A stretch of 64,000 nt of DNA from Adineta vaga. Its lineage: Eukaryota > Animalia > Rotifera. The DNA lies in contig CP075493.1 in assembly GCA_021613535.1 (NCBI GenBank), forward strand, positions 3,596,001-3,660,000, read 5' to 3'. Positions within the stretch are counted from its first letter, which is position 1; every line of letters starts with the position of its first letter. This document shows positions 2,103-61,278 of this stretch, piece by piece. Position numbers and translations under genes: made by a program. The notes beneath the pieces are model-generated. The model was given only the letters and a program-made list of their open reading frames with translations, was not told where the DNA came from and did no database searches.

Positions 2103-4065
2103 TACGATTGTTGTCTTTCCTATGTATGCATGACCGATGTCGAGTTGATGATGCCGATAAACAATTTAGAATGGTAAGAAATTTTTAAATTCTGTCGTAG
2201 ATTACAGTTAAAAACATATTCACCTTTTGTCTCTTGAAAATCAATCATATTACCTTGGATACGAAAAAGAAAAGCAATTCAAAAGAAAAAAAAAAGAAAG
2301 TTTTAAAAGTAAATGGTAATTATCGCATTCTACAGGAAAGAAATAGATAAACATCATAATATTGATTTTAAATCCTCGTCGAAAAGTTTTTTACTTAGTT
2401 CAAAATAATAAAAAACGTAGAGAATGATCTGTATTTTCATATGCTAATTGTATTTTTTGACAGGTATTTATTTTATTCTTGAATTGAGTCAAGTGATTAT
2501 AGAGAACGAAAAGTTTATTACAATCAGAATTTAAGATAAGATGGGTGTGGATAGAAATCTTCGATCATCAAGAATAATCTATATCCTATATAACTTGATC
2601 AGACAAAGCAGTATATTAGAAAGATTATTTCTAATCTCGATTGAATGATAATGAACGTTAGATCAATGAATTATTTTAGTGTTCATTTAATGATTTAATT
2701 TATCGTCATCGAATTCGAAGGTATGTTATATTCAAATCAATAGATGTCACTAGTGTTTATCCGGATAATTGTCAATCATTACAACGTCATCGATTAAATT
2801 TTCTTTCTTTTCGAATATTTTCAATAATAAAATCTCAATGGAGGATATTTCATATCATTCTAATTGCTTAAAAATACCCATTGGTCACACCTTCATTTTA
2901 ACTTTGTTTATTTTATTTCATAATAGATCTCTTTATTTTCATTATTTTAACACTGTTTGTATGTCAACAGCGAATTAGTTTTAATATAATTATTTATTTG
3001 ATATCAAGTAAGTGTTTATCTTGAAATCAAGGAAATTTATTTTTATCCATGTACAGATTAATGATTATTTTGCGAAGAGAATTATCAAAGAATTGACCAT
3101 TGATGATGCAGTAAAAGGTTTGAGATAACTAATACAATCGTTGATTCTTTAATGCATCTTTTTGTTTATAATTCTGCCGCTGTTCTTGAATGTTTTGATC
3201 GTGCAGGCATATGTAAACAGAAGATAAAGATGTAAAATTAAAATGCGACTTTGTGCGAGAGGTACCATTCGAAAAGCTTTATCGATGGTGACTTTGAAAA
3301 GACGCGATAGAACTATTGCAACGATGGTATTATTTTATCAATAACTGAAAACAAAATCGATCTATTCTGAGGTCAATTCTTATCGAGAATTCATAACAAC
3401 GAAGAGTGTATTTTTCTCTATAACACATTGACCAAATGTTTTGTCAAGGTCATTTCGTATATAGTTTGACAGTTTATTTAATATGTTTTCATATATTTGT
3501 TTTCTATTTGCAAAGAAAAAGAACAAAACTGTAATATGTATTGTCAATAATATATACATAACGAGTTTCTTTCTATCATATAGACAAAGACAGTGTCGAT
3601 AGATCGACATGCAATAGAAAAAAAAGGCAGAGAGATGAAATGGTATCGATGATAAACATTATCTTTCTCAACAAATTTTAACATCAAAGTAAATCAATAC
3701 ATAACAAACATCCCATTGTTCAATAAATCACGCATTGAATGCGTGTTATATATTTAACTAAACATTTCTTTTAAAGTTAGTCTTGTAGATTTCTTTTTCT
3801 CTTTCATTTGTTTGTCTTATCTCTCGGCTTTTTTCTTTCGTTCTTACGTTAACTGAATCAATAAGACATACCAGTAGTATATCACGCATCAAGTGCATGA
3901 TCAGTTAGCAATGGCATTGATAATAATAAGAAGAAGAATAGTCATAAACATCGTTTCAAAATATTTCATTGTCTTTTAGTGCAACGTGCGGTAATCAATA
4001 GTGAATTTGACGAACGAGTAACAATTATAAAGTGTGAAAATAATGAGGATTGTCTTGAACATGAT

Positions 4066-6478
4066 ATGCAACGAATATCAACAACGATGGCGTTAGGAAT
4101 AAATTCAATGAATAATAATACATTTGGAAGTAATAATGAATTACTAGATTGTGTTGTTTGTGGAGATCGTGCAACAGGTAAATCAATGGAAAACAAAACA
4201 TATTTCATTCTTACATTTTACTTTAGGTAAACATTATGGAGCGATATCATGTGATGGTTGTAAAGGATTTTTTCGACGAAGTGTGAGAAAAACTCCAACT
4301 TATGAATGTCGACATCAAAATAGTTGTACGATTGATAAAGATAAACGAAATCAATGTCGACATTGTCGATGGAAGTATGGAATATAGTTTTTGTCAATCT
4401 ATTTTTTTTTATTTTGAAATAAATTCACTTATTGTAGAAAATGTATTCGAATGGGTATGAAAAAAGATGGTAAGAATTTTGTTTGTTTTGCATATAGAAG
4501 ATAAAATGTTTTCGATTCAAATATTTTTAGCTGTACAAAAAGAAAGAGATCGTCTTGGACGATCAAGTACAATCAAATCTTTAAAACGTGTTAATACTAA
4601 TTATGAAGATGACGATGATGATCTTAGTATTATGGCACTCTTAAGAGCAGAACTAACAGCAAAAGAAGTATGAAACAAATTTATAAAAGTTTTTTTTGTT
4701 GTATGAAAGAAAAAGCTTTTCTTGTCGTTTGTAGTATATTGGACGCCATATTCAACTAGATCGATATCCCTCGAATACAGAACGTGTACAAGCAACTTTA
4801 GAGACAATTGGTATATCAATGAATTATCAACTTCGAAGTTTAATCGAATGGGCCAAAGATCTCAAGGGTTTCATTGATTTATCTGATAATGATAAAGTAA
4901 TTTGATTTGATCATAAGACGAAAAGAATGAAAAGAAAATTTCAATGAAATTTATTTAGATTGCACTTTTACGTGGTCATACAGGTGAAAATCTGGTCTTA
5001 GGTGTTGCTTGTCGTTCATTAAACTGTGATGATTATTTACTTCTTGGTAATCATTATGTTATTCCTCGTTTAACATCTGATCCTGGTTTGACACGTGCAG
5101 CAGGAAGAATTCTTAATGAAATTGTTAAACCATTAAAAGATATTCAATTAGATGAAAAAGAATATGCTTGTTTAAAAGCAATTGTTTTCTTCGATAATGG
5201 TTTGTATTTTATCGACAAATGAAGAGATCGAAGAAGAAAAACTCTTATCATTTCATTTATTCTTTGTAGATAACAAATCACTCGCAGATCCAATGCGTGT
5301 AAAAGAATTACGTAAACGTGTTCAAGTTAATCTTGAAACTTATATAAATCAACAAAAACCAGTCATGCGTGGACGATTTGGTGAATTATTATTATTACTT
5401 CCACCTTTACAAAATATAGCTCGTCTTATGGTGGATCTTGTTGCACGTTACAATCAAGATACAAAACAAGTAGATGATCTTATCAATGAAATGCTTTTAA
5501 GTAAGTCATAAGCGAAAATGAAAAACAAAGACGTGTTGTTGTTGTTTTTTCCCCTCGCATTTGATCGAAAGAAATAAGTTTATCGCAAAAAATTGTAGTT
5601 TCGTAAGTTCAGATAGATATCGTGATGATTGTCAAGATTCAATGATAACGACAACAACAAATACAATTCAGATGATAACAACAACGACATCATCACCGAG
5701 TAATTCAAGTAAGAATGATGATATGATATATAAATCTATTAACATAAACACAATCCATAATACAATGCACGTTCGAAACTAATGATTCCTTTCTTTTTTT
5801 GCATGTTTGTATGTTTTTTTTATCAAAATATGAAAGAGTATTGTTACTGTTTTTAGCTAACATATAATTATTAAACATTCTAGAAATAACTTTTGACATT
5901 CTTATTCTGTTTTTTTTATATATTTAGTTTCAAAAGAAAATGATCTTGATTCCAATGGTTCATCACTTGATACCGATATGGAAGATAGTACATCCCAATC
6001 ACAAGATAGTCAACAATATCCTGATCCATCTTTAGCAACACCCGTTCCAACTTCAATTATGTTTCATCCTCATGATATCTCCCATATTCAACTTTTACAA
6101 ATGAATTCAATTATCGATCCAAATTTAAATCATCATAATACTACTTTAGTTTCAAATTCAATTAATACTGATCTACATGATTATCATCATGGGCAAATTT
6201 TACAATTTTTGACGGATTCATCCACTGATCGATTACGAACAGTTAAACGTTCAAAAGCGATTACAACTCCTGTTTCATCATCAACCAATGATCCTAATGG
6301 TGATATGAATTTCTTATGTGAACTCGTTACTCCACCAGCTAATCAACGACAATTACATTTTTCGAATATTCTGTCCGATAATGATTGGCATAGTCGAATA
6401 GGATTAACGAATCCAACATCATCACATCCGATTGATACATCCAAACACATACATGAACAACGAAATATTCTACAATAA
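4066..6478 (+). CDS. HNF4: Nuclear receptor HNF4 (NR2A), multi-exon; start codon uncertain
   Basis: The spliced DBD reads [31 protein letters not shown]...[38 protein letters not shown] segments: [38 protein letters not shown] and [15 protein letters not shown]. The last exon (from 5928) continues in frame into ORF 5978-6478. Confidence 0.93.
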
Positions 6479-8095: not shown

Positions 8096-8713
8096 TTAGT
8101 TGAATCCTGTTATTTGTGGATATTGCGTTGGTTGTCTTGTTGGTGGTTGTAATTCTTTAACTACTTTACAAGGATTTCCAACAGCTACAACATTTGCTGG
8201 TATATCCTTAACAACAACACTACCAGCACCAATAACACTATTATCACCAATGGTTACACCAGCAACAATAATAGCACCACCTCCAATCCATACATTATTT
8301 CCAATGCGAATAGATTTTCCATATTCGACTGCAGAAAGTCGTTGTTGAGGATCAGTTGGATGTGTAGCACCATAAAATTTCACATCCGGACCTATCAATA
8401 CAAAATCTCCCACATAAACTGGACAAATATCTAGTATAACTAAATTATAATTTGCAAATGAATTTTCACCCCAATAAATATTATAACCATAATCACATTG
8501 AAATGGTCTTTCAATAACTGAATTTGTTCCAAATTTACCAAATATTTTTTGTAACATTTCATTTCGTTTTTTCTCTTCACTTGGACGAGTAGAATTATAT
8601 TCATAAATGAAATCTTTACAAATGGCCCGTTCATTTAATAATTCTGGCGTAAATGCATTATATAATTCGCCAGCAAGCATTTTCTCTTTCTCACTACGTG
8701 TATCAGTCGACAT
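8096..8713 (-). CDS. maa: Maltose/galactoside O-acetyltransferase (Mac domain + left-handed beta-helix), intronless, non-metazoan type
   Basis: EKEKMLAGELY N-terminal Mac motif, PFQCDYGYNI, ATHP (catalytic His), hexapeptide repeats IGNNVWIGGGAIIVAGVTIGDNSVIGAGSVVVKDIP, AVGNPC. Confidence 0.92.
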   Translation of the reverse strand: MSTDTRSEKEKMLAGELYNAFTPELLNERAICKDFIYEYNSTRPSEEKKRNEMLQKIFGKFGTNSVIERPFQCDYGYNIYWGENSFANYNLVILDICPVYVGDFVLIGPDVKFYGATHPTDPQQRLSAVEYGKSIRIGNNVWIGGGAIIVAGVTIGDNSVIGAGSVVVKDIPANVVAVGNPCKVVKELQPPTRQPTQYPQITGFN

Positions 8714-38727: not shown

Positions 38728-39681
38728 ATGGCTAAATATAGAAATCAATTACCTCAACTTTCCGGTGGATTTTTCATCATTAGTGGTGGCTTAGAAACGT
38801 ACTTAGTTCATCAGAAAGGCATGAACCTTCCCTACTTTGCTGCAATCTGTGCAATGAAAGATCAATCAGGATGTAAATTCATCAAAGATTATCTATCTAC
38901 GTTCGTTCTTTTAGCACAAAAATACGGTGTTGGTGTTATTTTGCAATCACCAACATGGCGTGCCAGTCCTGATTGGCTTAAAAAACTAGGCTATTCTGAT
39001 CAAGATCTTCTCAGCATCAATCGTCAGGCTGTTGATTTACTTGTTGATATTCGTGAGAAGCATGAGACAGTAAACTCTCCAATTATTATCAATGGAGGTA
39101 TTGGTCCACGTGGAGATGGTTATAATTCTACGATCGTCATGTCACCTGATGAAGCACAAACATATCATTCAGCACAAATCAATGCTCTTAGTCAAACTAA
39201 AGCAGATCTAATAACTGCTTTCACGTTAAACTATTCCGAAGAAGCCATCGGAATTGCACGTGCAGCTAAAGCAGCTAGCATGCCTATTGTTATTTCATTT
39301 ACAGTCGAAACCAATGGACAATTACCAAATGGACAATCATTAAAAGAAGCTATCGAACTGGTAGATAATGCGACTGAGAAAACTCCCATTTATTATATGA
39401 TCAATTGTGCACATACGAGTGCATTTGAACAGCTCTTAAATCCAGAAGAAGCATGGGTACAACGAATCCGTGGATTCAAGGGTAATGCATCAAAAAAGAG
39501 TCATGCAGAACTGAATGATAGTAAAGAACTCGATGATGGTGATCCAGTAGAATTTGGGCAATGTAATCTTGCACTATTGAACAAGCTCAAAAATGTGAAC
39601 ATACTTGGTGGATGTTGTGGAACAGATATACGTCATGTCGAAGAAACATGCAAAGCATGTTGTAAAAGCAGACAATCATAA
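38728..39681 (+). CDS. Homocysteine S-methyltransferase, intronless, bacterial type
   Basis: MAKYRNQLPQL..GGLET, SPTWRASPDW, IGPRGDGY, ISFTVETNGQLP; Zn ligands INCAH and GGCCGTD; NASKKSHAEL. Confidence 0.92.
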   Translation: MAKYRNQLPQLSGGFFIISGGLETYLVHQKGMNLPYFAAICAMKDQSGCKFIKDYLSTFVLLAQKYGVGVILQSPTWRASPDWLKKLGYSDQDLLSINRQAVDLLVDIREKHETVNSPIIINGGIGPRGDGYNSTIVMSPDEAQTYHSAQINALSQTKADLITAFTLNYSEEAIGIARAAKAASMPIVISFTVETNGQLPNGQSLKEAIELVDNATEKTPIYYMINCAHTSAFEQLLNPEEAWVQRIRGFKGNASKKSHAELNDSKELDDGDPVEFGQCNLALLNKLKNVNILGGCCGTDIRHVEETCKACCKSRQS

Positions 39682-48861: not shown

Positions 48862-51229
48862 TTAAGTACCAAAACGTTTTCGTTTTAATGCTGGTGGTAA
48901 ACACTGTTCAACAATGGATGGTAATAATTCCACAACGAATAATTGTGTTGAGGATAAGAGTGTTACATGTAAAAGATATTTAAATTGTTTACAAACATGA
49001 ATAGGTGAATTTGTTTGATTTGTATTATTGAAAATTTTTGTATAAGTTCCCGGCATTTTCTTTCCACGTTCAATAATACTTAAATATGTTGAATCAATAA
49101 CAAAAAGTTTCTCTTTTGTATCATAGAATAAATTAATAATTGGACTTCGTTCCGAAAACCATTGTAATGGCATTCGTTTTAAATATTTACGTGTCCAATC
49201 CGAATATTCATTCTGTTGAATATCATATTCAATAATCGATCGATCAGCATAAGCACATGCTAAACGATCATTAGCAAATGACATTGCTGTACATTGATAT
49301 GTTTCTTGTGGTAATTGTGCAAGAATATGATAGGTTGAATTGAGATAAATTGTTACATGTCCATAACGATCTGCTGTAGCGATATATTTTGATGAAACTT
49401 CAAAATGAAGTGTTGATGGCAAACAGGAAATAATTCGATTAAGTTTATAAGGTGTTAAAGAAAAACAATATAATTGACTACGAGAATTTAATGCAAATAA
49501 TGAAGATGATTGAAAACGTAACTGAAGAATATTCTTAATCGATGAAAATGATTGATCCATATTTTGTTCATCGGAATAGGTTTTAATTGGAATAACACTC
49601 AATTGTGATTGTGGATCTAAACCTAGAGACAAACAAATTTAATCAATTCAAAATTCGTCGTATGAATGAATTCAATTACCTTGAACAACATAAACATGTA
49701 AACCAATTGTATCACCCATTGCAATTGTTACTTGTTCATCCGTTTTCGTTTTCTTAATTGCCATTGCTACAGTATCAATTCGAGCTTGATGTGTCGTCTT
49801 AATTTGAACAAGATTTTTTGGTGCACGTTCGAGAATATCTTCTCCATTCTCATTCATACCACCTTCTTTTCCTATTGACCATAATTCAATATAATCTCGA
49901 TATGTAAAAAGAAAATAATTTCCTTTTTGATGAATTTTATTTCGATGTTGAGTAAAATTAAAACATTTTCGCCAGAGAACAGGTGGCTTGGAATTATCAC
50001 GAACAATATCATGAACAAGTAATCGTGCATCAAGACCACCAGATATTAACATTAATTTATTACTTAAATTATGTTCTTTATTACGTAGAGAAGCAAAACG
50101 TGATGGAATTAATGCTAATGAACGTACATCATGTGAATGAGAATGAATCGAGATTGTTTTAATCCATTGTTTTGTTGAATCAGTTGTTGGTAATGTTGTC
50201 GATGCTGTTGTTACTGTTGATTTTGGTGAAACAAGTTCGATACGAACGATAACAGAATCAACACCAGAACAGAATAATGTTTGTTCATCAGATGATAATG
50301 CCATACAAAGTACATCAGCACGATGGGTTTGAAATGATCTAAGAAATAAGAACAAATGAATTCAACATATGAAAAGTTAAGGATGGGTGTGGCAAATGAA
50401 TTCATGACATCCTAATCTAGATTATAGATCAAATTGATATTAATTTCATAACCTACCGAATTAATGTTCCATAGACAGCATCCCAAACACATGTTCGACC
50501 TGATGAATCACCACTAAAAACCGTATAATCATCGGTAACAGCTAAACACCAAATAATTGTATCTTTTTGTCCACGTCGATTCGATGTTGATGATAATTTT
50601 CCTACATTAATTTGTTGAATTGTACGTTTTTGTCTTGTTGAACATATATAAATTCGATTGATACTTCCAGCAACCAAAAAATCATCATCATTTGTATGCC
50701 ATGCTAATGAAACAATACGTGCAGCTTGTTTACATACCGACATAGCTAAAGAGAATTGACTAGCATCCTAAACAAATCGTATTCATAGATAAATCACATC
50801 TCAAATAAAGAAATGTTTTACTTCATCAAGTTGATAAACATTGACATGTCCAGTTTCTGTTCCTACAGCAATTCGTCGTGTTGCTTCATGTTTTGCAATA
50901 CTCCAAATTGCTCCACCAGCAGCATGACATGATGTTAAAATTTCAAATGTTATTGGATCATAGGCAATTAATTGACCATCTAAACCAGCTGTAATCAAAT
51001 ATTTATCTAACCAAATAATCAATTCAGGTGAATGTGATGCATTTCGAGGTTGAATGGTACGTTCAAGTGTAAATGAATCATGACTATTCCATAATTCTAT
51101 GGAATGATCAGAACGAAGAACTGCTAATAGATGATTTGGTGATGAACTATGTTGATGATGAGATAGACATAGAATTGATGAAAGACGTGGCTTATAGAGA
51201 TGAGTACGATGTACGAGAAAATCACACAT
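48862..51229 (-). CDS. UTP4: U3 snoRNP-associated WD40 protein UTP4 (cirhin), 4 exons
   Basis: WD40 repeats, HRADVLCMA, HSHDVRSL, and the C-terminal LPPALKRKRFGT characteristic of UTP4/CIRH1A. Confidence 0.92.
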
Positions 51230-52458: not shown

Positions 52459-55400
52459 TTAGCTAATAGCTTTCAATGGTTCTGTTGAAACGACTGTCGG
52501 TGATGGAAATTGTCGTTGAAGAATCGAGAGAACAGAAGCAACATCTTCAGTTAATTTCGTTTCTAATATTGTTAATCGTCTAGAAAAATATTGATAAGAT
52601 ATTTTCTTCAATAACATAAGAAAAAAGATTGATTTACTTCGTCAATTCTTGTAGTCGATATTCGACACTTGATTGATAGGGATCAAATGTTGATGATTGA
52701 TTTGTCTAAAAGAAAATTGTTTTCGTCAAAAACAAAACCTTTTCAATCATTTTTTATGTTACAAACCATTGGAATTAATTCATCATTTACTGCTGTAAAT
52801 GACGAACGATGAAAAGCATTCAGTAATGATTGATTACCTAAAAAGAAAATTCTATCAAAATAAAGAATGTCTCGATGACATGAAAAATATACCATGAAGC
52901 ATCGATGCACCACTAAAAGATTTTTCTCGACGATCACGACGTCGTGCACCTATTGTACCAAATTCCAAATTAGCTGGAGTTATATCTTGACCAGCTAATT
53001 GTGGATTGAATTCAAGTATACCTTTGAAAGAAAATTCCAAATTTATTCAATATGATTAGTGTCTACATTAGACTTGTTTTTTTTTCTTATTTGGACAAAA
53101 CCAGCTGTTAAACAGGGTCGATTATCCTTTCGAAAGACATCAATTTTGGTCTCAGATGCTCAAATGATATTTCATATCGTCGATCGTATTTCATCTCATA
53201 AATAAATAATTATTCGCAAGTCAAACATACAATTAAATTAATGATCAATTAGCTAGCGATAAATAGCAAAAAATATTCAACAATCTAATAGCATTCATTA
53301 TAATTGCTTGATAAAAATTTCCTTCTAAGTACATTTATATTTTATTGTGAAGAGATATTGTTTGAAAAACAAAATCTACGTACAGTGACGTTGTTAGGGT
53401 TTTTTTAACGTGAGATGACTTTTAAGAATAACACTATGATAAGAACTTGTTTATTTTCTTTTCTTTCGAGACAAGTCTGATGAAGAATCGTTGTGTTAGC
53501 AAACTAGAGAAAAGGACAACTCTGTGATGTGCAAAAAATATAGGCAGTCATATCAGCGAAGAAGGAAAAATGCAGTAAACAAACTCTTGTTTTCTGCCTC
53601 TTCTTTTACGCCTCTTACTCAGGTCATTCACGTCATACGCTCGGTATCGGCTGACTAACGTATGAATGTCGATCTTTTTTTCCCTTCGATGTACGAAGAT
53701 ATCTCTCTATATATAAGGAGTGGTGTAAAGGAATGTGTGCATGTTTGTTCGCCTTTTCATCGGAGACAAGATAACGTTTCCCCCTGTGTCTACGATGTAC
53801 TGTTCATGGAAAGATATTTTTGGATACACGACCGAGAATAAGAAAGCGCAATAATGTTTCTATTCTTCATAATTTTTTCCAGATTTTCTCATTTCAACGT
53901 ATCCTATTTGCAACTGTATAGATCAAACTAATGGCAGATACACAACAACAATCCGCAGTTGTTTCTGATGTCCATACAGAAGTGAAAGAAACTAATACAC
54001 AAGGTAAATCATTTGTTCTCTGATGTTATAATCTAACTGATTTACAAATTATGATTGTTTTCAATAGATCAAAATGTCGAACAAAAAGGTAGCAAAGGAT
54101 CAAATTTTCATATTATATATGTTTATCTATTCGTATTTAAAAGGTGCCGAAGTGAAAGCTGCAGCAAGTGAAGTTGTTGATGCAACAAAAGAGAAAGCTG
54201 CTGAAGTGAAAGATGCAGTACAAACAGCAGCTGATGATGTAAAACCTGTCGTTAATGATGCGAAAGAAGTTGGTATGTATTTTCTTCTTTTTACTTTGAA
54301 TTATTCAATTAATTAACGGAGTAAAAGTTTTAGTAGGAGAGCATATACTTATTTATTTAGACGAACATTGACTTTCCATAGAAAGAACAAGGGAAAAAAC
54401 CAATTTATTAATAACCCAAGGGAGAGTTAGTTTTTCATCCGAAACGTCTCTGAAGAAGAATGTTTATTTTCTTAGATATGATTACAACCTAGAATTTATC
54501 ACTATATAAAATTTTTGTTATCTATTTTTAGGTGCTCAACTTGTTGGTGAAGCAAAAGATGCAGTAGAGAAAAAGGTTGACGAAGCAAAAGAAGCTGGTG
54601 CACAATTAGCCAATGATGTATCACAAAAAACTGAAGAAGTTAAACAAGTTGCCCAAGAAAAAGTCGATCAAGCGAAAGAAACAGGAGCTCAATTAGCAGA
54701 TGATGCAGCAAACAAAGCAGAAGAAGCAAAAACTACGATTGTTGAAACAGCAATTCATGCAAAAGATGTTGCAGTTGAAAAAGCTCAAGAACTTGGACAT
54801 GCTGTTAGTATTCAACTCAAGTTTTTTATCTCGGAGATTCATTCCTTTCTTTTAGGTTGCCGAATCCGTACAAGCCGTTCCTTCAGCTGTAGCTGGTGCT
54901 GCTAACTTAGTAGGCGAACAACTTGCAGCTGCTGGACAATGGGTAAGTTTCTCTATAAGAGAAAGGATTCTTTGAATTTGAACAAAATTTTTTCTAGACT
55001 GCAGAAAAAGCAACTGAAGTCGGATCAGCTGTTGTTCATTCAGCAGAAGAAGCATTACAAAGGTACTCTTTTTTAATCAGGAAGTTTTCTCGTTAAATGT
55101 AGATGTTTATTTAGTCTTGCTGGATTAGCGACGGCTGCGAAAGACAAAGGTAAACTTTAGTATACCGTTAAAATAGAAGAAAACTCTTAGTTTCTATTTG
55201 ATCTGCAGTGACTGAAGTAGTTAGTCAAGCTATAGATAAAGGTAGATATATCATTTTATTCTAACGTGTCAATGCTTAAATTTTTGTCTATTTCACAGGT
55301 ACTGAACTGGAAGAGCAAGCAGCAGAAAACGTTGAAGACGCAAAAGATAAAGCTAGTGAATTAGCTGCTGATGCCAAAGAAAAAGGCGAAGGTCAGTATT

Positions 55401-58400
55401 CTTATTTGAGATAATAAATGATCTTATTTTCTAATCTAATACGAATAGAAGTGAAAAAGAATGTGGAAGAAAAAGGTAGAATTTATTTATAGATTTGAAT
55501 TATTTCTAATTTCGAATATTTAGCTGGTGAATTGAAAGATCAAGCTGCGGAAAAAGTCGATGAAGCAAAAGATAAAGCAAGTGAATTGACGGCTGATGTC
55601 AAAGCTAAAGGCGAAGGTAATTTAAACGACATAAAGTTTTCGAAATGTTCTGAAATTATTGTTTCTATGTAGAAGTAAAGAATGACGCTGAACAAAAAGG
55701 TTTGATCATTAATTTAGAAAATCATTTGCATCGATTTCAATCTTTTAGTTGATGAATTAAAAGACAAAGCTTCGGAGAAGATTGATGATGCAAAAACTAA
55801 AGCTGAAGGTATTTCATTTTGTTTTTATCTCGTAAACTGAACTTAATAATTATTTCTCTCTGAATAGAAGTCAAACAAGATGTTCAAGAAAAAGGTATAA
55901 TGCTGCAGTTTTGTTTTGAAAATAGAATTATGTTGTTCATTTAGCTGGAGAAGTGAAAGACAAAGCTGTTGAACTAGCAGCTGATGCAAAAGCTGCAGGT
56001 CAAGGTAAAAATCATCAATAATTTTCAAAGGAAACCAGTTTAAAATTTCTATTATTAGAAGTGAAACAAGAAGTTGAACAAAAAGGTTTGTTCTTTTTTC
56101 TAAATTGATTTTCGAATGAAAACTTTCATTCTTTTAGCTGGTGAATTAAAAGATAAAGTTTCCGAAAAAGTTGATGAAGTGAAAGACAAAGCTGGTGAAG
56201 TTGCTGCTGATGTCAAAGCAGTAGGTCAAGGTAAAAGACGTTTTGTTTTGTAAAGGAAAACATTAACTATTTGCAAATTTATTTATTAGAAGTTAAACAA
56301 GAAGCTGAACAGAAAGGTTTTCTATTTCGTATTAGAATCTTTGTTCAATTAGAAATTTATTATTCTAGCTGATGAATTAAAAGATAAAGCTTCAGAGAAA
56401 GTTGAAGAAGCAAAAGACAAAGCAGGTGAATTAGCTACTGATGCTAAGGCGAAAGGGGAAGGTAAATAACATCTATATCTGTCGAGAAGAGATCATGATC
56501 TTGATATTTTTAGAAGTAAAAGAAAATGCTGAACAGAAAGGTTTGATTATTAACGAATGTAAGACATATTTTGAATAATTTTAAATATTCTAGTTGATGA
56601 AGTAAAAGACAAAGCTAATGAAGTCGCTGCCGATGTAAAACAAGCAGGCAAAGGTAACGAACATAATTCTTGATGAAAATGAATATTTGAATAGTATTTC
56701 TCTAATAGAAGTCAAAGCTGATCTTCAACAAAAAAGTAAATAAATTGAAATTATATTTTATATTTCATTCAACTATTCTCGTTTCGTTTTTAGCCGAAGA
56801 ACTTCCACCGAATAGTGACGCATGCAATTCACCAACGGACACGTTTGCGTTGTGACAGAACCAACCGATCAAACTGTACCTGCTAACACGACCGAAAGGA
56901 AATAAATATCAACAGATACAAAAATATATCCTCATCTGTTTTGACAGCCTTTCTTTCGTTTATCAACGTTGTGTATACATTATCCTTTCTTGCTGTGTGT
57001 GTGGGCATTTATTTATTTAACCTATAGTGTTGCTTTCAACTAATATTGAGACACTAGCGCATACACTTTACGAAATAAATTCTAATACTAACAATACTCA
57101 TCAAATTGAAACTATCATTTTACGTTTCCTGAAAATCTTATTAAAACATACAAATCTATTTTACCTGTTCCACTAGGATATTCATCGAAATACGATTGAT
57201 GTGGAGCCATTATAGATATATTATCATCTTCAGTTCGATTACAGGATGCACCTGAGAGAGAATAAATATTTTCATCAGTAAGAAATTCTTTCATTCAATC
57301 AATTCTTCTTACTTCCTCGACATTGTTGTGAATTTGGAAAATATTTTGATCGACATTCATTCGATTTTGTAACAAGATCTTCCTTTTAAAAACAAATAAA
57401 TCATCGCTACAGATAGATCAGTATCAAAATGAAAACAAAACTATATACATCACGTAAAGTCAGTGTAATTTTTAAATTCTGACAAAAACTTTGTGCAAAT
57501 TCCGGATACATATCAATCACTTCCAGTAAATCTTCTCGTAAGATTTTATGCAAATCACAATAAGTTAATGCACGAACATTAAACGCAGATTTGCCTGGTT
57601 CACTGTATAGCAGTGGATTCTCTCCAAGAATATCGTCTTTACCTAATGGAACAGAAAGAGAAATCATCGAAAGGCGTTCTTTTTTTATAGGTACATACTA
57701 AGAATAGCGACAACATTATCATCTTTCAAGATTTCTATAGATCCACGTGAAATAAAATAAATTGATGTTAAGATATCTCCTCGATGTGTTATGATATCAC
57801 CGGGTGGTGCATGTGTTGTCTTAAGTTTCATTGAAAATGTACGCAAACAACCGTCACTTGCATCTATGAAAAAAAAGCATTTAAAAGAAAAGAAAATTTT
57901 CTCTCAAACCTTTAAATGCTGCACAATTTTGCAACAATTGACTGTTTAAATGTAAGCAAATGTCTGCTTGTAAACATTCGGGAAAACCTTTCAAGACCAT
58001 ATTCATATCAATACCACTAGAATTTCAAAATAAAATGAAATTCGAAAGTAAATATATTGTATTTACTTTGTATAATTCCATGCGTGATTGAAATAATCTT
58101 CTAAACGTTGTCGAAGTGGATTTGGTATTTGATGAAAACGAATAAATTCTTTCACTCTATATGGAAACGATAAATTCATTTATAGACATCAATCTTTTCT
58201 TTGTTTATACCGTAACATTTGGATTTGATAACGTGCAGTACCCGAATATAATCTTTGAATAATAGCACTAACATTACCAAAAATACTGGCATACATCAAA
58301 GCTAAAAGAGAAGATAAATAGAAATTACGTGACGATTAATAGAACATAATTTGCAGGATATATCATATGGACATAAAAGCAAAATCAATCACATGCAGTT

Positions 58401-61278
58401 ATAATTTAAAAGCAATATTATACACTCTGTCTTTCTCACATCCGATTAACATAACAAAAATGGAAAAGACCTTTTCCATATTTGTATTCGGACTAACCTA
58501 AAAGAAAAGTAAATCGAATGAGAATTGTTTCGTTTGTTTTCTAATCTCTTACATTGCCAAAACCAACTGATGTAAGTGATGAAAATGTAAAATAAAGAGC
58601 AGTTATATATCTGGAACGAAGATTAGGTCCACCAATACATGAATTCGGATCAATTCGTGTTGATATTGTATCATTCGCAGATGAAAGTAATGAACAGTTA
58701 TATAATTGACCGGATGTGCGTGCTAATTCATCAAGCCATGTAATACGTAATCCTACAAAGAAGAAACGAAGCGAACACAAAACGACAACACAACATTGAC
58801 GACAACAGTGAGAGACGAAGACAATGAATCGAACGGAAACAAAACAAAAACAATTGAGAACTCACATCCTACGAGCATAATTATAATTGAAAAGCCCTTT
58901 TCACTATTAGTATTTGGACTAGAGAGAAGAGAGAAAGATTGCTAAGAAAGGAAAATTTTCGTTCGAAAATAATCGAGCTAACCTCACGTTACCAAAACCG
59001 ACTGATGTTAGAGAAGAAAAAGTAAAATAAAGAGCAGTAATATATTTGGATGTTTTCGTTGGACCAGATGTTGCATCTGAATCATCATAATACTGATGTG
59101 TATGATTAGCTAATTCAGCTAACCATCCAATAACTCTTTCAGTACCTAATGAAATTAAAAGGGAATATCTTCGCTCGAAAATATAATCAAATGAAATCTT
59201 TTCTTTTATCGTCTTATAATTGATTAGGATAAATTGATTCTATTTACCATTATTATTTCGTTCAAGACGACCAATTGCATACCATATACAAGCAAGCCAA
59301 TGTGCAATAAGTGCAAATGTAGCAGTTAATAAAATTAACACTCCAATACCATATTCGGAATAACGATCTAATTTTCTTGCAATACGTACTAATCGTAATA
59401 AACGTGCTGTTTTCAATAAACCCATTAAGACTGTTGATTCTCCGCCACCTTGTGTTTGTACAAATGAAAATAAAATATCGAAAGGTATAGCTGCTGTTAC
59501 ATCAATCAGAAACCATCCTTTAAGATAGTGTTTAGCAATTTTACTTGCACGTGTTACTAATTCTTCATTACGTTCAACATATGTCGTACGTAAATTAACT
59601 AATAAATCAATAATAAACATAACATCAACAATAAGTTCGATAACATTCAAGGCACGTGATGGTCGTGAACGTTGTTTATTCGGTCCATCTTCATGCATCA
59701 GAAAAGCTGCAATATATGGTGTAACAATAGCTGTATAGATTACAAGTAATAATATAAACCAATCCCATGCTGCTTTAATTGGCGAATAATGAAATATAAT
59801 TGTACGTGGAATACGACGACTATCCGGTAGACGAAAATCAGGTGCAACATCTTCACCTAAGGATAAAATCTGGGCAATATGATGCGGAATATTTGGTAGA
59901 AATGATCGATTTGTTTTGTTCGATTCTTTGGTTTCTTTTTTAATAACAGTTTCTAAATACAAACAAAGTCAATTTATGAGAATAAAAATTCCATTTAAAA
60001 ACAATGTCTTTTACCAGCGATATTACTTATACTTTGCGATTTATTTCTCATTAAATCAGCATCAGTATTATTATTATTCCATGGATTACCCTCTGGTTTT
60101 AATAAATTATTCGAACTTATTGAAGATTGTTGACTAATTTTATAATCCAATGGAAAAGTTTTTGCTGGCGGAGAATTTATTTCATCCAAATGAATCATTG
60201 TTGTCGTTTTATGATTTAAAGCTATTCAAAAATACACAACAAATGAAAATTTAATGGAAAAAAATGAATATATTTAGATTATCTGAATGATATTTAATTA
60301 AAACAGATGTAGAACATATATATTTAATTATTATCGAATATTCAACAATGATGAAATGAATCTTATCTATAAATTACTCGATAATTTAATTAACGCTCAA
60401 ATGTTCTCTCTTAAAAGAATGAGATGGATAACATCATTCATTACCTATATAACCTGGTGTCTCAATGGAAACAATTGGCGTTTCAGATTGATTTCCATCT
60501 TCAAATGAAAAATTCTTGTTCTGTGATGGTCGACGTTTTCCTAATGGATTTAACATATCTAACCATGAACGTTTACGAATTCCATCTAGAACAATCGATT
60601 AGAATGGCTCAATCAATAGAGAATATTTTCTCTACGTACTTGTTGGACTAATTGAGTACTCGTGAATTTTTGCTAGAAGGTTATATCATATGGAATATAT
60701 TGACCTTTAGTGTGAGAAAAAAAAGAAGTCTAAATTGATACATACGTATTCGTCGTGGACGATTCTGATCGATATTTTCAGTAAATTCTAAGATGAATAG
60801 AATAATATCGCATAATTCATTTTTCACCGGTGCAATTAAAACTGAACAACGAAATCTTGTACCTAAATACAAATAATCTAATGAAAACTCAAAGTATTAT
60901 ACGAAAGAAATTTACCAATATTTCGATATAAAACTATTTCCACTTCTTTTTCATCACTTCCATGTAATGCATGACGAATTTGTTTAATCGATTTTTCGCT
61001 TGTTTCAATTCCGTATAAAAATTCACATGTACAGGGCTTTTGAATAATATCTGAACGTGAATAACCAGTTAGTTCGCAAAAAGCATCATTACAATAAATT
61101 ATCGGTTTATTAGCCAATTGAGCATTGGATATAAGAAACCGTCGATCTAATTAAGACGAAAATATGTTTATGTCCTATTAATAATGAAAATATTCATACT
61201 TTGTGAGTCAAATTTACGTATAATTGTATCAATAAATGTATTTTGAGGAGCCGACACATGACCCCGTTTCATCGGCAT
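52459..61278 (-). CDS. KCNH2: ERG-type voltage-gated K+ channel (KCNH2/6/7 family), multi-exon, with duplicated pore exon and nested gene
   Basis: PAS-cap [26 protein letters not shown] domain, S4 [24 protein letters not shown], pore [23 protein letters not shown]6 [25 protein letters not shown], c[16 protein letters not shown], and C-terminal coil [23 protein letters not shown]; stop at 52459. Confidence 0.95.
53706..53716 (+). promoter_or_regulatory. Candidate TATA box of the nested LEA-like gene
   Basis: ctatatataag about 220 nt upstream of ATG 53931, with a splice acceptor (gtatag) 9 nt before the ATG. Confidence 0.35.
53931..56855 (+). CDS. Group 3 LEA-like hydrophilic repeat protein (~505 aa, 23 exons), nested antisense in an ERG intron
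   Basis: Exons: 53931-54003, 54068-54088, 54144-54272, 54532-54803, 54856-54942, 54998-55062, 55115-55149, 55209-55241, then 14 alternating modules from 55299 to 56735, and last exon 56794-56855. All introns are GT-AG and the total is 1518 nt in frame. A/K/E/D-rich 11-mers such as [11 protein letters not shown] and [11 protein letters not shown]. Confidence 0.85.
58553..58752 (-). other. ERG pore exon B (alternative)
   Basis: 200 nt, phase 1 to 0, flanked by tttgtag and gtaaga; encodes [67 protein letters not shown]. Confidence 0.88.
58988..59145 (-). other. ERG pore exon A (alternative)
   Basis: 158 nt, phase 1 to 0, flanked by ttcattag and gtgagg; encodes [53 protein letters not shown]. 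Confidence 0.88.

What the first reader, a model, noticed from the sequence alone, without database searches (positions are those of the whole stretch)
55299..56735. Modular LEA-like gene built from strictly alternating symmetric micro-exons (93/27/93/27/60/27/60/27/93/27/93/27/60/27 nt)
Seen in the sequence: seven 27-nt micro-exons (55449-55475, 55673-55699, 55868-55894, 56059-56085, 56290-56316, 56514-56540, 56709-56735; consensus EVKxxxEQK) alternate with 93-nt exons (55299-55391, 55524-55616, 56138-56230, 56369-56461) or 60-nt exons (55749-55808, 55945-56004, 56594-56653). All are phase 1-1 and multiples of 3, separated by ~50-60 nt introns that have diverged while the exons stay similar. 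The 93- and 60-nt classes differ by exactly 33 nt, one 11-mer. A 33-nt exon (55209-55241) and a 21-nt exon (54068-54088) upstream are also symmetric. Established: group 3 LEA proteins are 11-mer amphipathic repeat proteins linked to desiccation tolerance. Inference: the gene grew by tandem duplication of an exon-intron-microexon-intron unit, and any subset of modules can be skipped in frame, possibly yielding a combinatorial family of protectant lengths, reminiscent of schistosome micro-exon genes. It is nearly invisible to ORF-based annotation.
Basis: partly seen in the sequence, partly recalled or inferred. Interest (0 to 1): 0.85.

Follow-up and report, generated by a model that had tools for sequence, protein, structure and literature searches.

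The report
Rotifer LEA-like gene from exon doublets
A rotifer gene for a likely drying-protection protein grew by copying pairs of tiny exons, and the pairs appear to stay together because each single exon encodes half a helix turn out of step; RNA data show one full-length product, not a combinatorial set of variants.

Summary
The genome fits the bdelloid rotifer Adineta vaga (inferred). RNA contigs from four studies splice every array intron as predicted. One unbranched 618-nt contig carries exons 10-20 in each study, and contig lengths (753, 618 nt) equal the all-exon model, so abundant skipping is not seen; rare isoforms are untested. New result: the array is one continuous amphipathic helix pattern (99.25 degrees per residue). 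Each single exon (9, 20 or 31 aa) is a half-turn unit, so skipping one flips the hydrophobic face about 165 degrees, whereas a long+micro pair (29 or 40 aa) keeps it. The homeolog and seven syntenic bdelloid copies (1 to 11+ modules) follow the same rule. The protein works like a cytosolic group 3 LEA protein, but Pfam LEA_4 stays below cut-off and stress induction is untested. It is not a schistosome-type micro-exon gene. The scan noted a similar phase-1-module LEA-like gene about 160 kb upstream (s1-505581); I checked it and it obeys the same rule.

The parts
53931..54003 (+). Exon 1 coding part (ATG at 53931; transcript starts at or before 53879); no signal peptide
54068..54088 (+). Exon 2, 21 nt, phase 1-1, included in RNA
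   Evidence: 753-nt contig length needs it
54144..54272 (+). Exon 3, 129 nt, phase 1-1
54532..54803 (+). Exon 4, 272 nt, intron-free 22/29/40-aa repeats; best LEA_4 hit (E 7.7e-7, 29.3 bits, cut-off 51.1)
54856..55149 (+). Exons 5-7 (87, 65, 35 nt; phases 0-0, 0-2, 2-1): conserved non-modular core shared by all homologous loci
55209..55241 (+). Exon 8, 33 nt (11 aa, full-turn unit), phase 1-1
55299..55475 (+). Doublet 1: 93-nt exon 55299-55391 + 27-nt exon 55449-55475 (40 aa)
55524..55699 (+). Doublet 2: 93-nt exon 55524-55616 + 27-nt exon 55673-55699 (40 aa)
55749..55894 (+). Doublet 3: 60-nt exon 55749-55808 (lacks last 11-mer) + 27-nt exon 55868-55894 (29 aa)
55945..56085 (+). Doublet 4: 60-nt exon 55945-56004 (lacks an earlier 11-mer) + 27-nt exon 56059-56085 (29 aa)
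56138..56316 (+). Doublet 5: 93-nt exon 56138-56230 + 27-nt exon 56290-56316 (40 aa)
56369..56540 (+). Doublet 6: 93-nt exon 56369-56461 + 27-nt exon 56514-56540 (40 aa)
56594..56735 (+). Doublet 7: 60-nt exon 56594-56653 + 27-nt exon 56709-56735 (29 aa)
56794..57111 (+). Last exon: stop TGA ends 56855 in the window haplotype (a second allele reads on to about 56905); AATAAA at 57074, poly(A) tail joined at 57111

Best explanation
A constitutively spliced bdelloid gene for an acidic, hydrophilic, signal-peptide-less (probably cytosolic) LEA-like protein. Its C-terminal half grew long ago by tandem duplication of a two-exon unit (long exon, short intron, 27-nt exon, short intron). The protein repeat is 29 or 40 aa (hendecads plus one heptad), a whole number of helix turns; the two introns cut it into half-turn pieces (20 or 31 aa, and 9 aa). 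Only the doublet can be gained or lost without flipping the hydrophobic face, which accounts for the strict alternation. Short introns are most likely recognised across the intron, so the micro-exons are included by default. Shown: exon structure, splicing, inclusion in the dominant transcript, helical register, module-number variation between species, purifying selection. Inferred: the protein is disordered when hydrated, folds into a long class A amphipathic helix on drying, and coats membranes or shields proteins as group 3 LEA proteins do.
For: Splicing and inclusion: (all-exon model predicts contigs of 753 and 618 nt, the observed lengths; no repeated 31-mer in the CDS that could collapse the assembly; two alleles are kept as separate contigs, so abundant variants survive). 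Register: array moment 0.307 at 99.25 degrees, residue-shuffle maximum 0.178; single-exon skips shift phase by 163-168 degrees on average, pair skips by 8-20, native junctions 19; 0 of 5000 exon-order shuffles reach the native value; at most 0.2% for L012, L016, L017. Homologues: (half-turn exons occur in pairs; exons that stand alone are 11, 22, 29 or 40 aa). Class A pattern: (82% of V/L/I on one face, 74% of Lys at the interface, 72% of D/E opposite). Old, constrained modules: (dN 0.13-0.30, dS 0.6-1.4). FoldIndex -0.10, no hydrophobic N-terminus. LEA_4 hits E 8e-7 (exon 4) and 49.1 bits versus cut-off 51.1 for a natural spliced homologue. Short flanking introns free micro-exons from special regulation in C. 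elegans (PMC8378409).
Against: LEA_4 never passes its curated cut-off; YtxH and Apolipoprotein models score higher on the spliced homologue, so the family label rests on low-complexity similarity. No expression data under drying could be tied to this gene. A homologue is present in an assembly labelled Rotaria magnacalcarata, a species I recall as not desiccation tolerant. Contigs drop rare variants and the run conditions are coded. The register rule need not reflect selection: unequal crossing-over copies whole periods and 11-mer self-similarity favours 33-nt deletions.
Confidence: 0.68

Rival explanations
1. Combinatorial micro-exon gene: any subset of the 14 symmetric exons is skipped to give many protectant lengths, as in schistosome MEGs.
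For: All 14 exons are phase 1-1 and multiples of 3. C. elegans lea-1 does have many isoforms, some induced by desiccation (PMC8670023). Assembled contigs cannot show rare forms.
Against: One unbranched all-exon contig in four studies; no skip joint among the 15 listed, and the 6 unlisted are fewer than the 8 upstream introns. Of about 15,200 subsets of 80 aa or more, only the 570 alternating ones keep the moment (mean 0.32 versus 0.20). Introns 48-59 nt; no signal peptide.
Confidence: 0.07
2. Limited, register-preserving alternative splicing: whole doublets (or a 27-nt exon together with a donor 6 nt upstream, net 33 nt) are skipped at low level or under stress.
For: Pair skips keep the register. 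Exons 55945-56004 and 56138-56230 carry AG|GT 6 nt upstream of the donor. Homologues have fixed 87-nt modules, the same net change.
Against: No such joint in any of four runs.
Confidence: 0.12
3. Same gene structure, but the protein is a constitutive lipid- or membrane-binding exchangeable-apolipoprotein or perilipin-like protein, or a structural coiled coil, with no particular role in drying.
For: Class A helix pattern; Apolipoprotein model 86.1 bits versus cut-off 90 and weak apoA-I/A-IV sequence hits (E 6e-5) for the spliced homologue; a Rotaria homologue folds in silico into three long helices (pLDDT 73, pTM 0.44); strong conservation of long-range register suggests a real folded state; expressed in all runs.
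Against: No signal peptide, no regular proline punctuation in the array, negative FoldIndex, no fold match at E under 0.001; nearest non-rotifer hits carry LEA_4 annotation.
Confidence: 0.2
4. The alternation is only a by-product of mutation: unequal crossing-over copies whole periods and deletions occur between 11-mer look-alikes, with no selection on helix register. (Compatible with the best explanation except for the cause of the rule.)
For: The 87-nt exons of L016 end in the same sequence as the micro-exons, as expected from recombination between similar ends 33 coding nt apart; L024 introns are still alike (mean 0.65, up to 0.79), showing recent block duplication.
Against: The register has lasted through near-saturated synonymous change with dN/dS about 0.1-0.4; it also holds in intron-free exon 4 repeats (29/40 aa) and in a second gene with different exon borders.
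Confidence: 0.35

Closest known systems
Group 3 LEA proteins (Pfam LEA_4, PF02987), e.g. C. elegans LEA-1
   Same: Hydrophilic A/E/K/V/D-rich repeats with 11-residue periodicity, amphipathic helix pattern, almost no W/C/F/Y, weak LEA_4 hits.
   Different: Below Pfam cut-off; repeat is 29/40 aa (hendecads plus a heptad), not pure 11-mers; C. elegans lea-1 makes many isoforms (PMC8670023) while this gene shows one dominant splice form.
Bdelloid lea-1 proteins (ArLEA1A/ArLEA1B of Adineta ricciae; lea1-C of A. vaga)
   Same: Bdelloid LEA-like proteins present as divergent pairs; one protects proteins, the other binds lipids (PMC4326354). LEA-labelled genes rise on rehydration in A. vaga (PMC10809525).
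   Different: From memory ArLEA1 proteins have a signal peptide and an ER-retention end; this protein and its homeolog have neither. No lea-1-named protein came up in three homologue searches. The primary papers were not held, so identity could not be tested directly.
Schistosome micro-exon genes (MEGs)
   Same: Runs of short symmetric exons.
   Different: MEGs have introns of 0.1-5 kb, mostly 15-nt exons, a signal peptide and isoforms from alternative splicing (10.1101/2023.06.21.545858). Here introns are 48-59 nt, 18% of the CDS is in exons of 36 nt or less, no signal peptide, no skipping seen.
Olduvai (DUF1220/NBPF) exon doublets
   Same: A repeat encoded by a small plus a larger exon, multiplied as a doublet inside one gene (PMC9313022).
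   Different: Unrelated protein; a recent primate expansion; no helical-register constraint described in the passages read.
Exchangeable apolipoproteins (apoA-I/A-IV, apolipophorin III)
   Same: Class A amphipathic helices from 11/22-mer repeats (own knowledge); near-threshold Pfam score and weak PDB sequence hits for the homologue.
   Different: No signal peptide, no proline-punctuated 22-mers, no significant fold match.

Membership tests
Group 3 LEA (LEA_4) | 11-residue periodic repeats able to form an amphipathic helix | tested here: met
   Autocorrelation peaks at 11, 18, 29, 40; moment 0.307 at 99.25 degrees versus shuffle maximum 0.178
Group 3 LEA (LEA_4) | Hydrophilic, poor in W/C/F/Y, predicted disordered | tested here: met
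   GRAVY -0.80, pI 4.55, 3 W/C/F/Y in 505 aa, FoldIndex -0.10
Group 3 LEA (LEA_4) | Pfam PF02987 above curated cut-off (51.1 bits) | tested here: inconclusive
Single exons 14.7-29.3 bits; natural spliced homologue L014 49.1 bits.
Group 3 LEA (LEA_4) | Induced by, or abundant during, drying or rehydration | tested here: inconclusive
   Transcribed in four studies but conditions coded and contig depth cannot rank expression; gene could not be mapped to ids in PMC10809525
Group 3 LEA (LEA_4) | Heat soluble, coil-to-helix on drying, protects proteins or membranes | not testable with these tools
   Needs bench assays
Schistosome MEG-type micro-exon gene | Coding region made mostly of very short symmetric exons | tested here: not met
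   18% of CDS in exons up to 36 nt, 43% in exons up to 81 nt
Schistosome MEG-type micro-exon gene | Long introns (0.1-5 kb) | tested here: not met
   21 of 22 introns are 48-64 nt, median 55
Schistosome MEG-type micro-exon gene | N-terminal signal peptide, secreted | tested here: not met
   Highest 11-residue hydropathy in the first 35 aa is 0.55
Schistosome MEG-type micro-exon gene | Many isoforms by skipping of central exons | tested here: not met
   One all-exon contig in four studies; holds for abundant forms only
Exchangeable apolipoprotein (PF01442, PF07464) | Class A amphipathic helices | tested here: met
Exchangeable apolipoprotein (PF01442, PF07464) | Pfam cut-off, signal peptide, helix-bundle fold | tested here: not met
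   86.1 of 90 and 18.8 of 36.3 bits on the homologue; no signal peptide; no fold match with E under 0.001
Bdelloid lea-1 (ArLEA1A/B) | Sequence orthology to ArLEA1A/B | not testable with these tools
   Sequences not returned by any tool; primary papers not held

The most novel reading that the evidence does not exclude
Bdelloid LEA-like genes obey a 'second reading frame': exon modules are gained, lost or skipped only in units that keep alpha-helical register, under selection for one long amphipathic face formed on drying; and under desiccation stress this gene skips whole doublets to tune helix length.
Probability: 0.12. Interest if true: 0.75.

Novelty: new variant of a known kind. Interest (0 to 1): 0.42.

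Why it matters
LEA proteins are usually treated as loose strings of interchangeable motifs. Here a 247-residue stretch has kept one helical face through old duplications, deletions, intron loss and saturated synonymous change in several rotifer lineages, and the exon borders give natural half-turn and full-turn deletion units. That makes a standing question directly testable: does long-range register of a LEA helix matter for protection? It also shows that frame-symmetric micro-exons need not mean alternative splicing, and that this abundant candidate protectant is fragmented or wrongly fused in public gene sets.

Tried and rejected
Combinatorial skipping: rejected for abundant forms. Assembly collapse as the cause of the single contig: rejected, the longest repeated word in the CDS is 19 nt, below k = 31. 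Recent or hypervariable array: rejected, dS between modules 0.6-1.4, similar to homeolog divergence; the module tree is mostly unresolved, so the order of duplications cannot be given. Intron homology inside the window array: only marginal (2 of 36 same-type pairs with z over 3). Fold and PDB searches gave nothing significant. Mapping the gene to expression tables in PMC10809525 failed (stored tables are cut). Two primary papers were not held. Literature searches for exon-module structure of LEA genes and for exon skipping in bdelloids found nothing relevant; a tropoelastin search gave no paper. The joined 505-aa model was built only inside scripts and was not sent to any search tool. Searches were coordinate slips, corrected afterwards. 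The automatic parser failed on L011, L015 and L022 (no usable anchor), L018 and L021 are cut by contig ends; these were left out of the module counts.
Full report
Observation. Extending the model gives 23 exons from ATG 53931 to TGA 56855 and a 505-aa product rich in A, E, K, V, D (GRAVY -0.80, pI 4.55, net charge -49). Twenty-one of 22 introns are 48-64 nt. No ORF of 90 aa or more is listed over the gene. The genome has 100.8 Mb in 6 contigs and about 30% GC, and the homologues with names are from Rotaria; I infer the bdelloid rotifer Adineta vaga.

Splicing. I laid 3,701 letters (53600-57300) on contigs of four runs from four studies. The contigs are spliced and one ends in poly(A) at 57111, so they are RNA. 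All 13 introns inside the array and the last intron are removed at the predicted sites in all four runs. One unbranched 618-nt contig carries the array from the end of the first 93-nt exon into the last 60-nt exon in each run, and a 753-nt contig (run X1; 772-774 nt with a longer 5' end in X14 and X15) carries exons 1-9. The all-exon model predicts exactly 618 and 753 nt for these spans, and the CDS has no repeated word over 19 nt, so the single path is no collapse. Allelic variants are kept as separate contigs at ratios near 1:2, so abundant splice variants should be visible; none is listed. Six joints were not shown, fewer than the eight upstream introns. Contigs drop rare forms and the run conditions are coded, so low-level or stress-specific skipping remains open.

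Why the alternation is strict. Residues 239-485 have one hydrophobic moment peak at 99.25 degrees per residue (0.307; residue shuffles at most 0.178). V/L/I lie on one face, lysines at the interface and acids opposite, a class A pattern. At this angle 9, 20 and 31 residues are each about half a turn out (173, 185, 197 degrees), while 29 and 40 are whole turns. Removing one exon shifts the hydrophobic face by 163-168 degrees on average; removing a long+micro pair shifts it by 8-20, like native junctions (19). None of 5000 exon-order shuffles reaches the native moment.

Homologues. The homeolog on C4 has 13 exons and only two 93+27 doublets, but has expanded its intron-free exon 4 with the same 29- and 40-aa units. 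Seven syntenic loci from other bdelloid assemblies, next to the same WD40 or enoyl-CoA hydratase gene and ERG-type channel gene, were parsed with a splice-site program of my own. They carry 1 (Rotaria sordida), 2, 4 or 5 doublets; one (L024) has eleven or more 87- or 66-nt exons and no micro-exon; one (L025) has micro-exons fused to the next exon. Half-turn exons come in pairs, and exons that stand alone are 11, 22, 29 or 40 aa (the 30-nt terminal exons of L012 and L017 end the helix and were left out, and one L012 exon was read as 27 nt at a tandem acceptor). These ortholog models are predictions without RNA, except L014, an intron-free record of a homologue that includes all its modules in register. 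Modules in the window gene are old and constrained (dN 0.13-0.30, dS 0.6-1.4, like homeolog divergence), and their introns have almost lost similarity, while L024 introns are still alike, direct evidence for exon-plus-intron duplication in this family. A second LEA-like gene about 160 kb upstream of this one, flagged earlier by the scan (s1-505581), has 87- and 66-nt phase-1 exons at the same 99.25 degrees. Mutation alone (unequal crossing-over, deletions between 11-mer look-alikes) could produce the same rule; selection on register is likely but not shown.

Function. Single exons hit LEA_4 weakly (best E 7.7e-7, 29.3 bits, cut-off 51.1); the spliced homologue L014 scores 49.1 bits on LEA_4, 99.7 on YtxH and 86.1 of 90 on Apolipoprotein. 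Language-model neighbours are LEA_4-bearing clusters at 0.82-0.90, a lead only. A Rotaria homologue folds in silico into three long helices with low global confidence and no fold match. There is no signal peptide or transmembrane segment. From known LEA biology (coil-to-helix on water loss, PMC8670023; protein versus lipid protection by the A. ricciae pair, PMC4326354; LEA-labelled genes rising on rehydration in A. vaga, PMC10809525) I infer a cytosolic protectant that becomes a long amphipathic helix on drying. I could not tie expression data to this gene.

Comparison. It works like a group 3 LEA protein; formal membership is unproven. It fails all four MEG features tested (10.1101/2023.06.21.545858). 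Default inclusion of micro-exons between very short introns has precedent (PMC8378409), and doublet duplication has precedent in Olduvai domains (PMC9313022). I found no paper on this exon architecture in bdelloid LEA-like genes, but the main lea-1 papers were not held.

Limits. By the operators' rule the joined spliced model was not sent to any search tool; I searched exon by exon by reference and used natural spliced homologues (L014, P0043, P0044, P0014) instead. No step needed referral.

Verdict. Real and well-supported gene structure; the combinatorial idea is not supported; the exon-doublet and helix-register rule is the new part. New variant of a known kind, interest 0.42.

Noticed in passing
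window 56839-56842: RNA contigs show a second allele (two substitutions and one extra base) that extends the C-terminus from 20 to 37 last-exon residues (505 to 522 aa). The longer form matches homologues, so the window haplotype carries the derived, shortened end.
   Followed up: yes
L035:2607-5284 (G000:C1 about 3492100-3494780): Second LEA-like gene with 120/87/66/87/87/87/87-nt phase-1 exons, same helical angle, homeolog near C4:10794250. It holds an exact 101-nt tandem duplication (L035 about 3928-4132) that creates a 40-nt frame-breaking exon copy: assembly artefact or a skipped pseudo-exon.
   Followed up: partly
L018, L019 (P0043, P0044); L007:7766-8554: Public Rotaria gene models fuse an upstream enoyl-CoA hydratase to the LEA-like gene; in this genome's C4 copy the hydratase is a separate, complete, intron-free 262-aa ORF, so the fusion is probably an annotation error.
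   Followed up: partly
window 55993-56004 and 56219-56230: AG|GT sits 6 nt upstream of the used donor in two long exons; using it while skipping the next micro-exon would remove exactly one 11-mer. Not seen in RNA contigs.
   Followed up: partly
L024:5786-7327: A homologue with eleven or more near-identical 87-nt exons and still-similar 49-51-nt introns in an alternating pattern: a recent expansion without micro-exons.
   Followed up: partly
window about 57200-60000 (- strand) and 48862-51229 (- strand): ERG/KCNH-type potassium channel gene downstream and WD40 gene upstream; both are conserved neighbours in homologous loci.
   Followed up: no
window 8096-8713 (-) and 38728-39681 (+): Intron-free ORFs that look like maltose/galactoside O-acetyltransferase and homocysteine S-methyltransferase by eye; candidates for horizontally acquired genes.
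   Followed up: no
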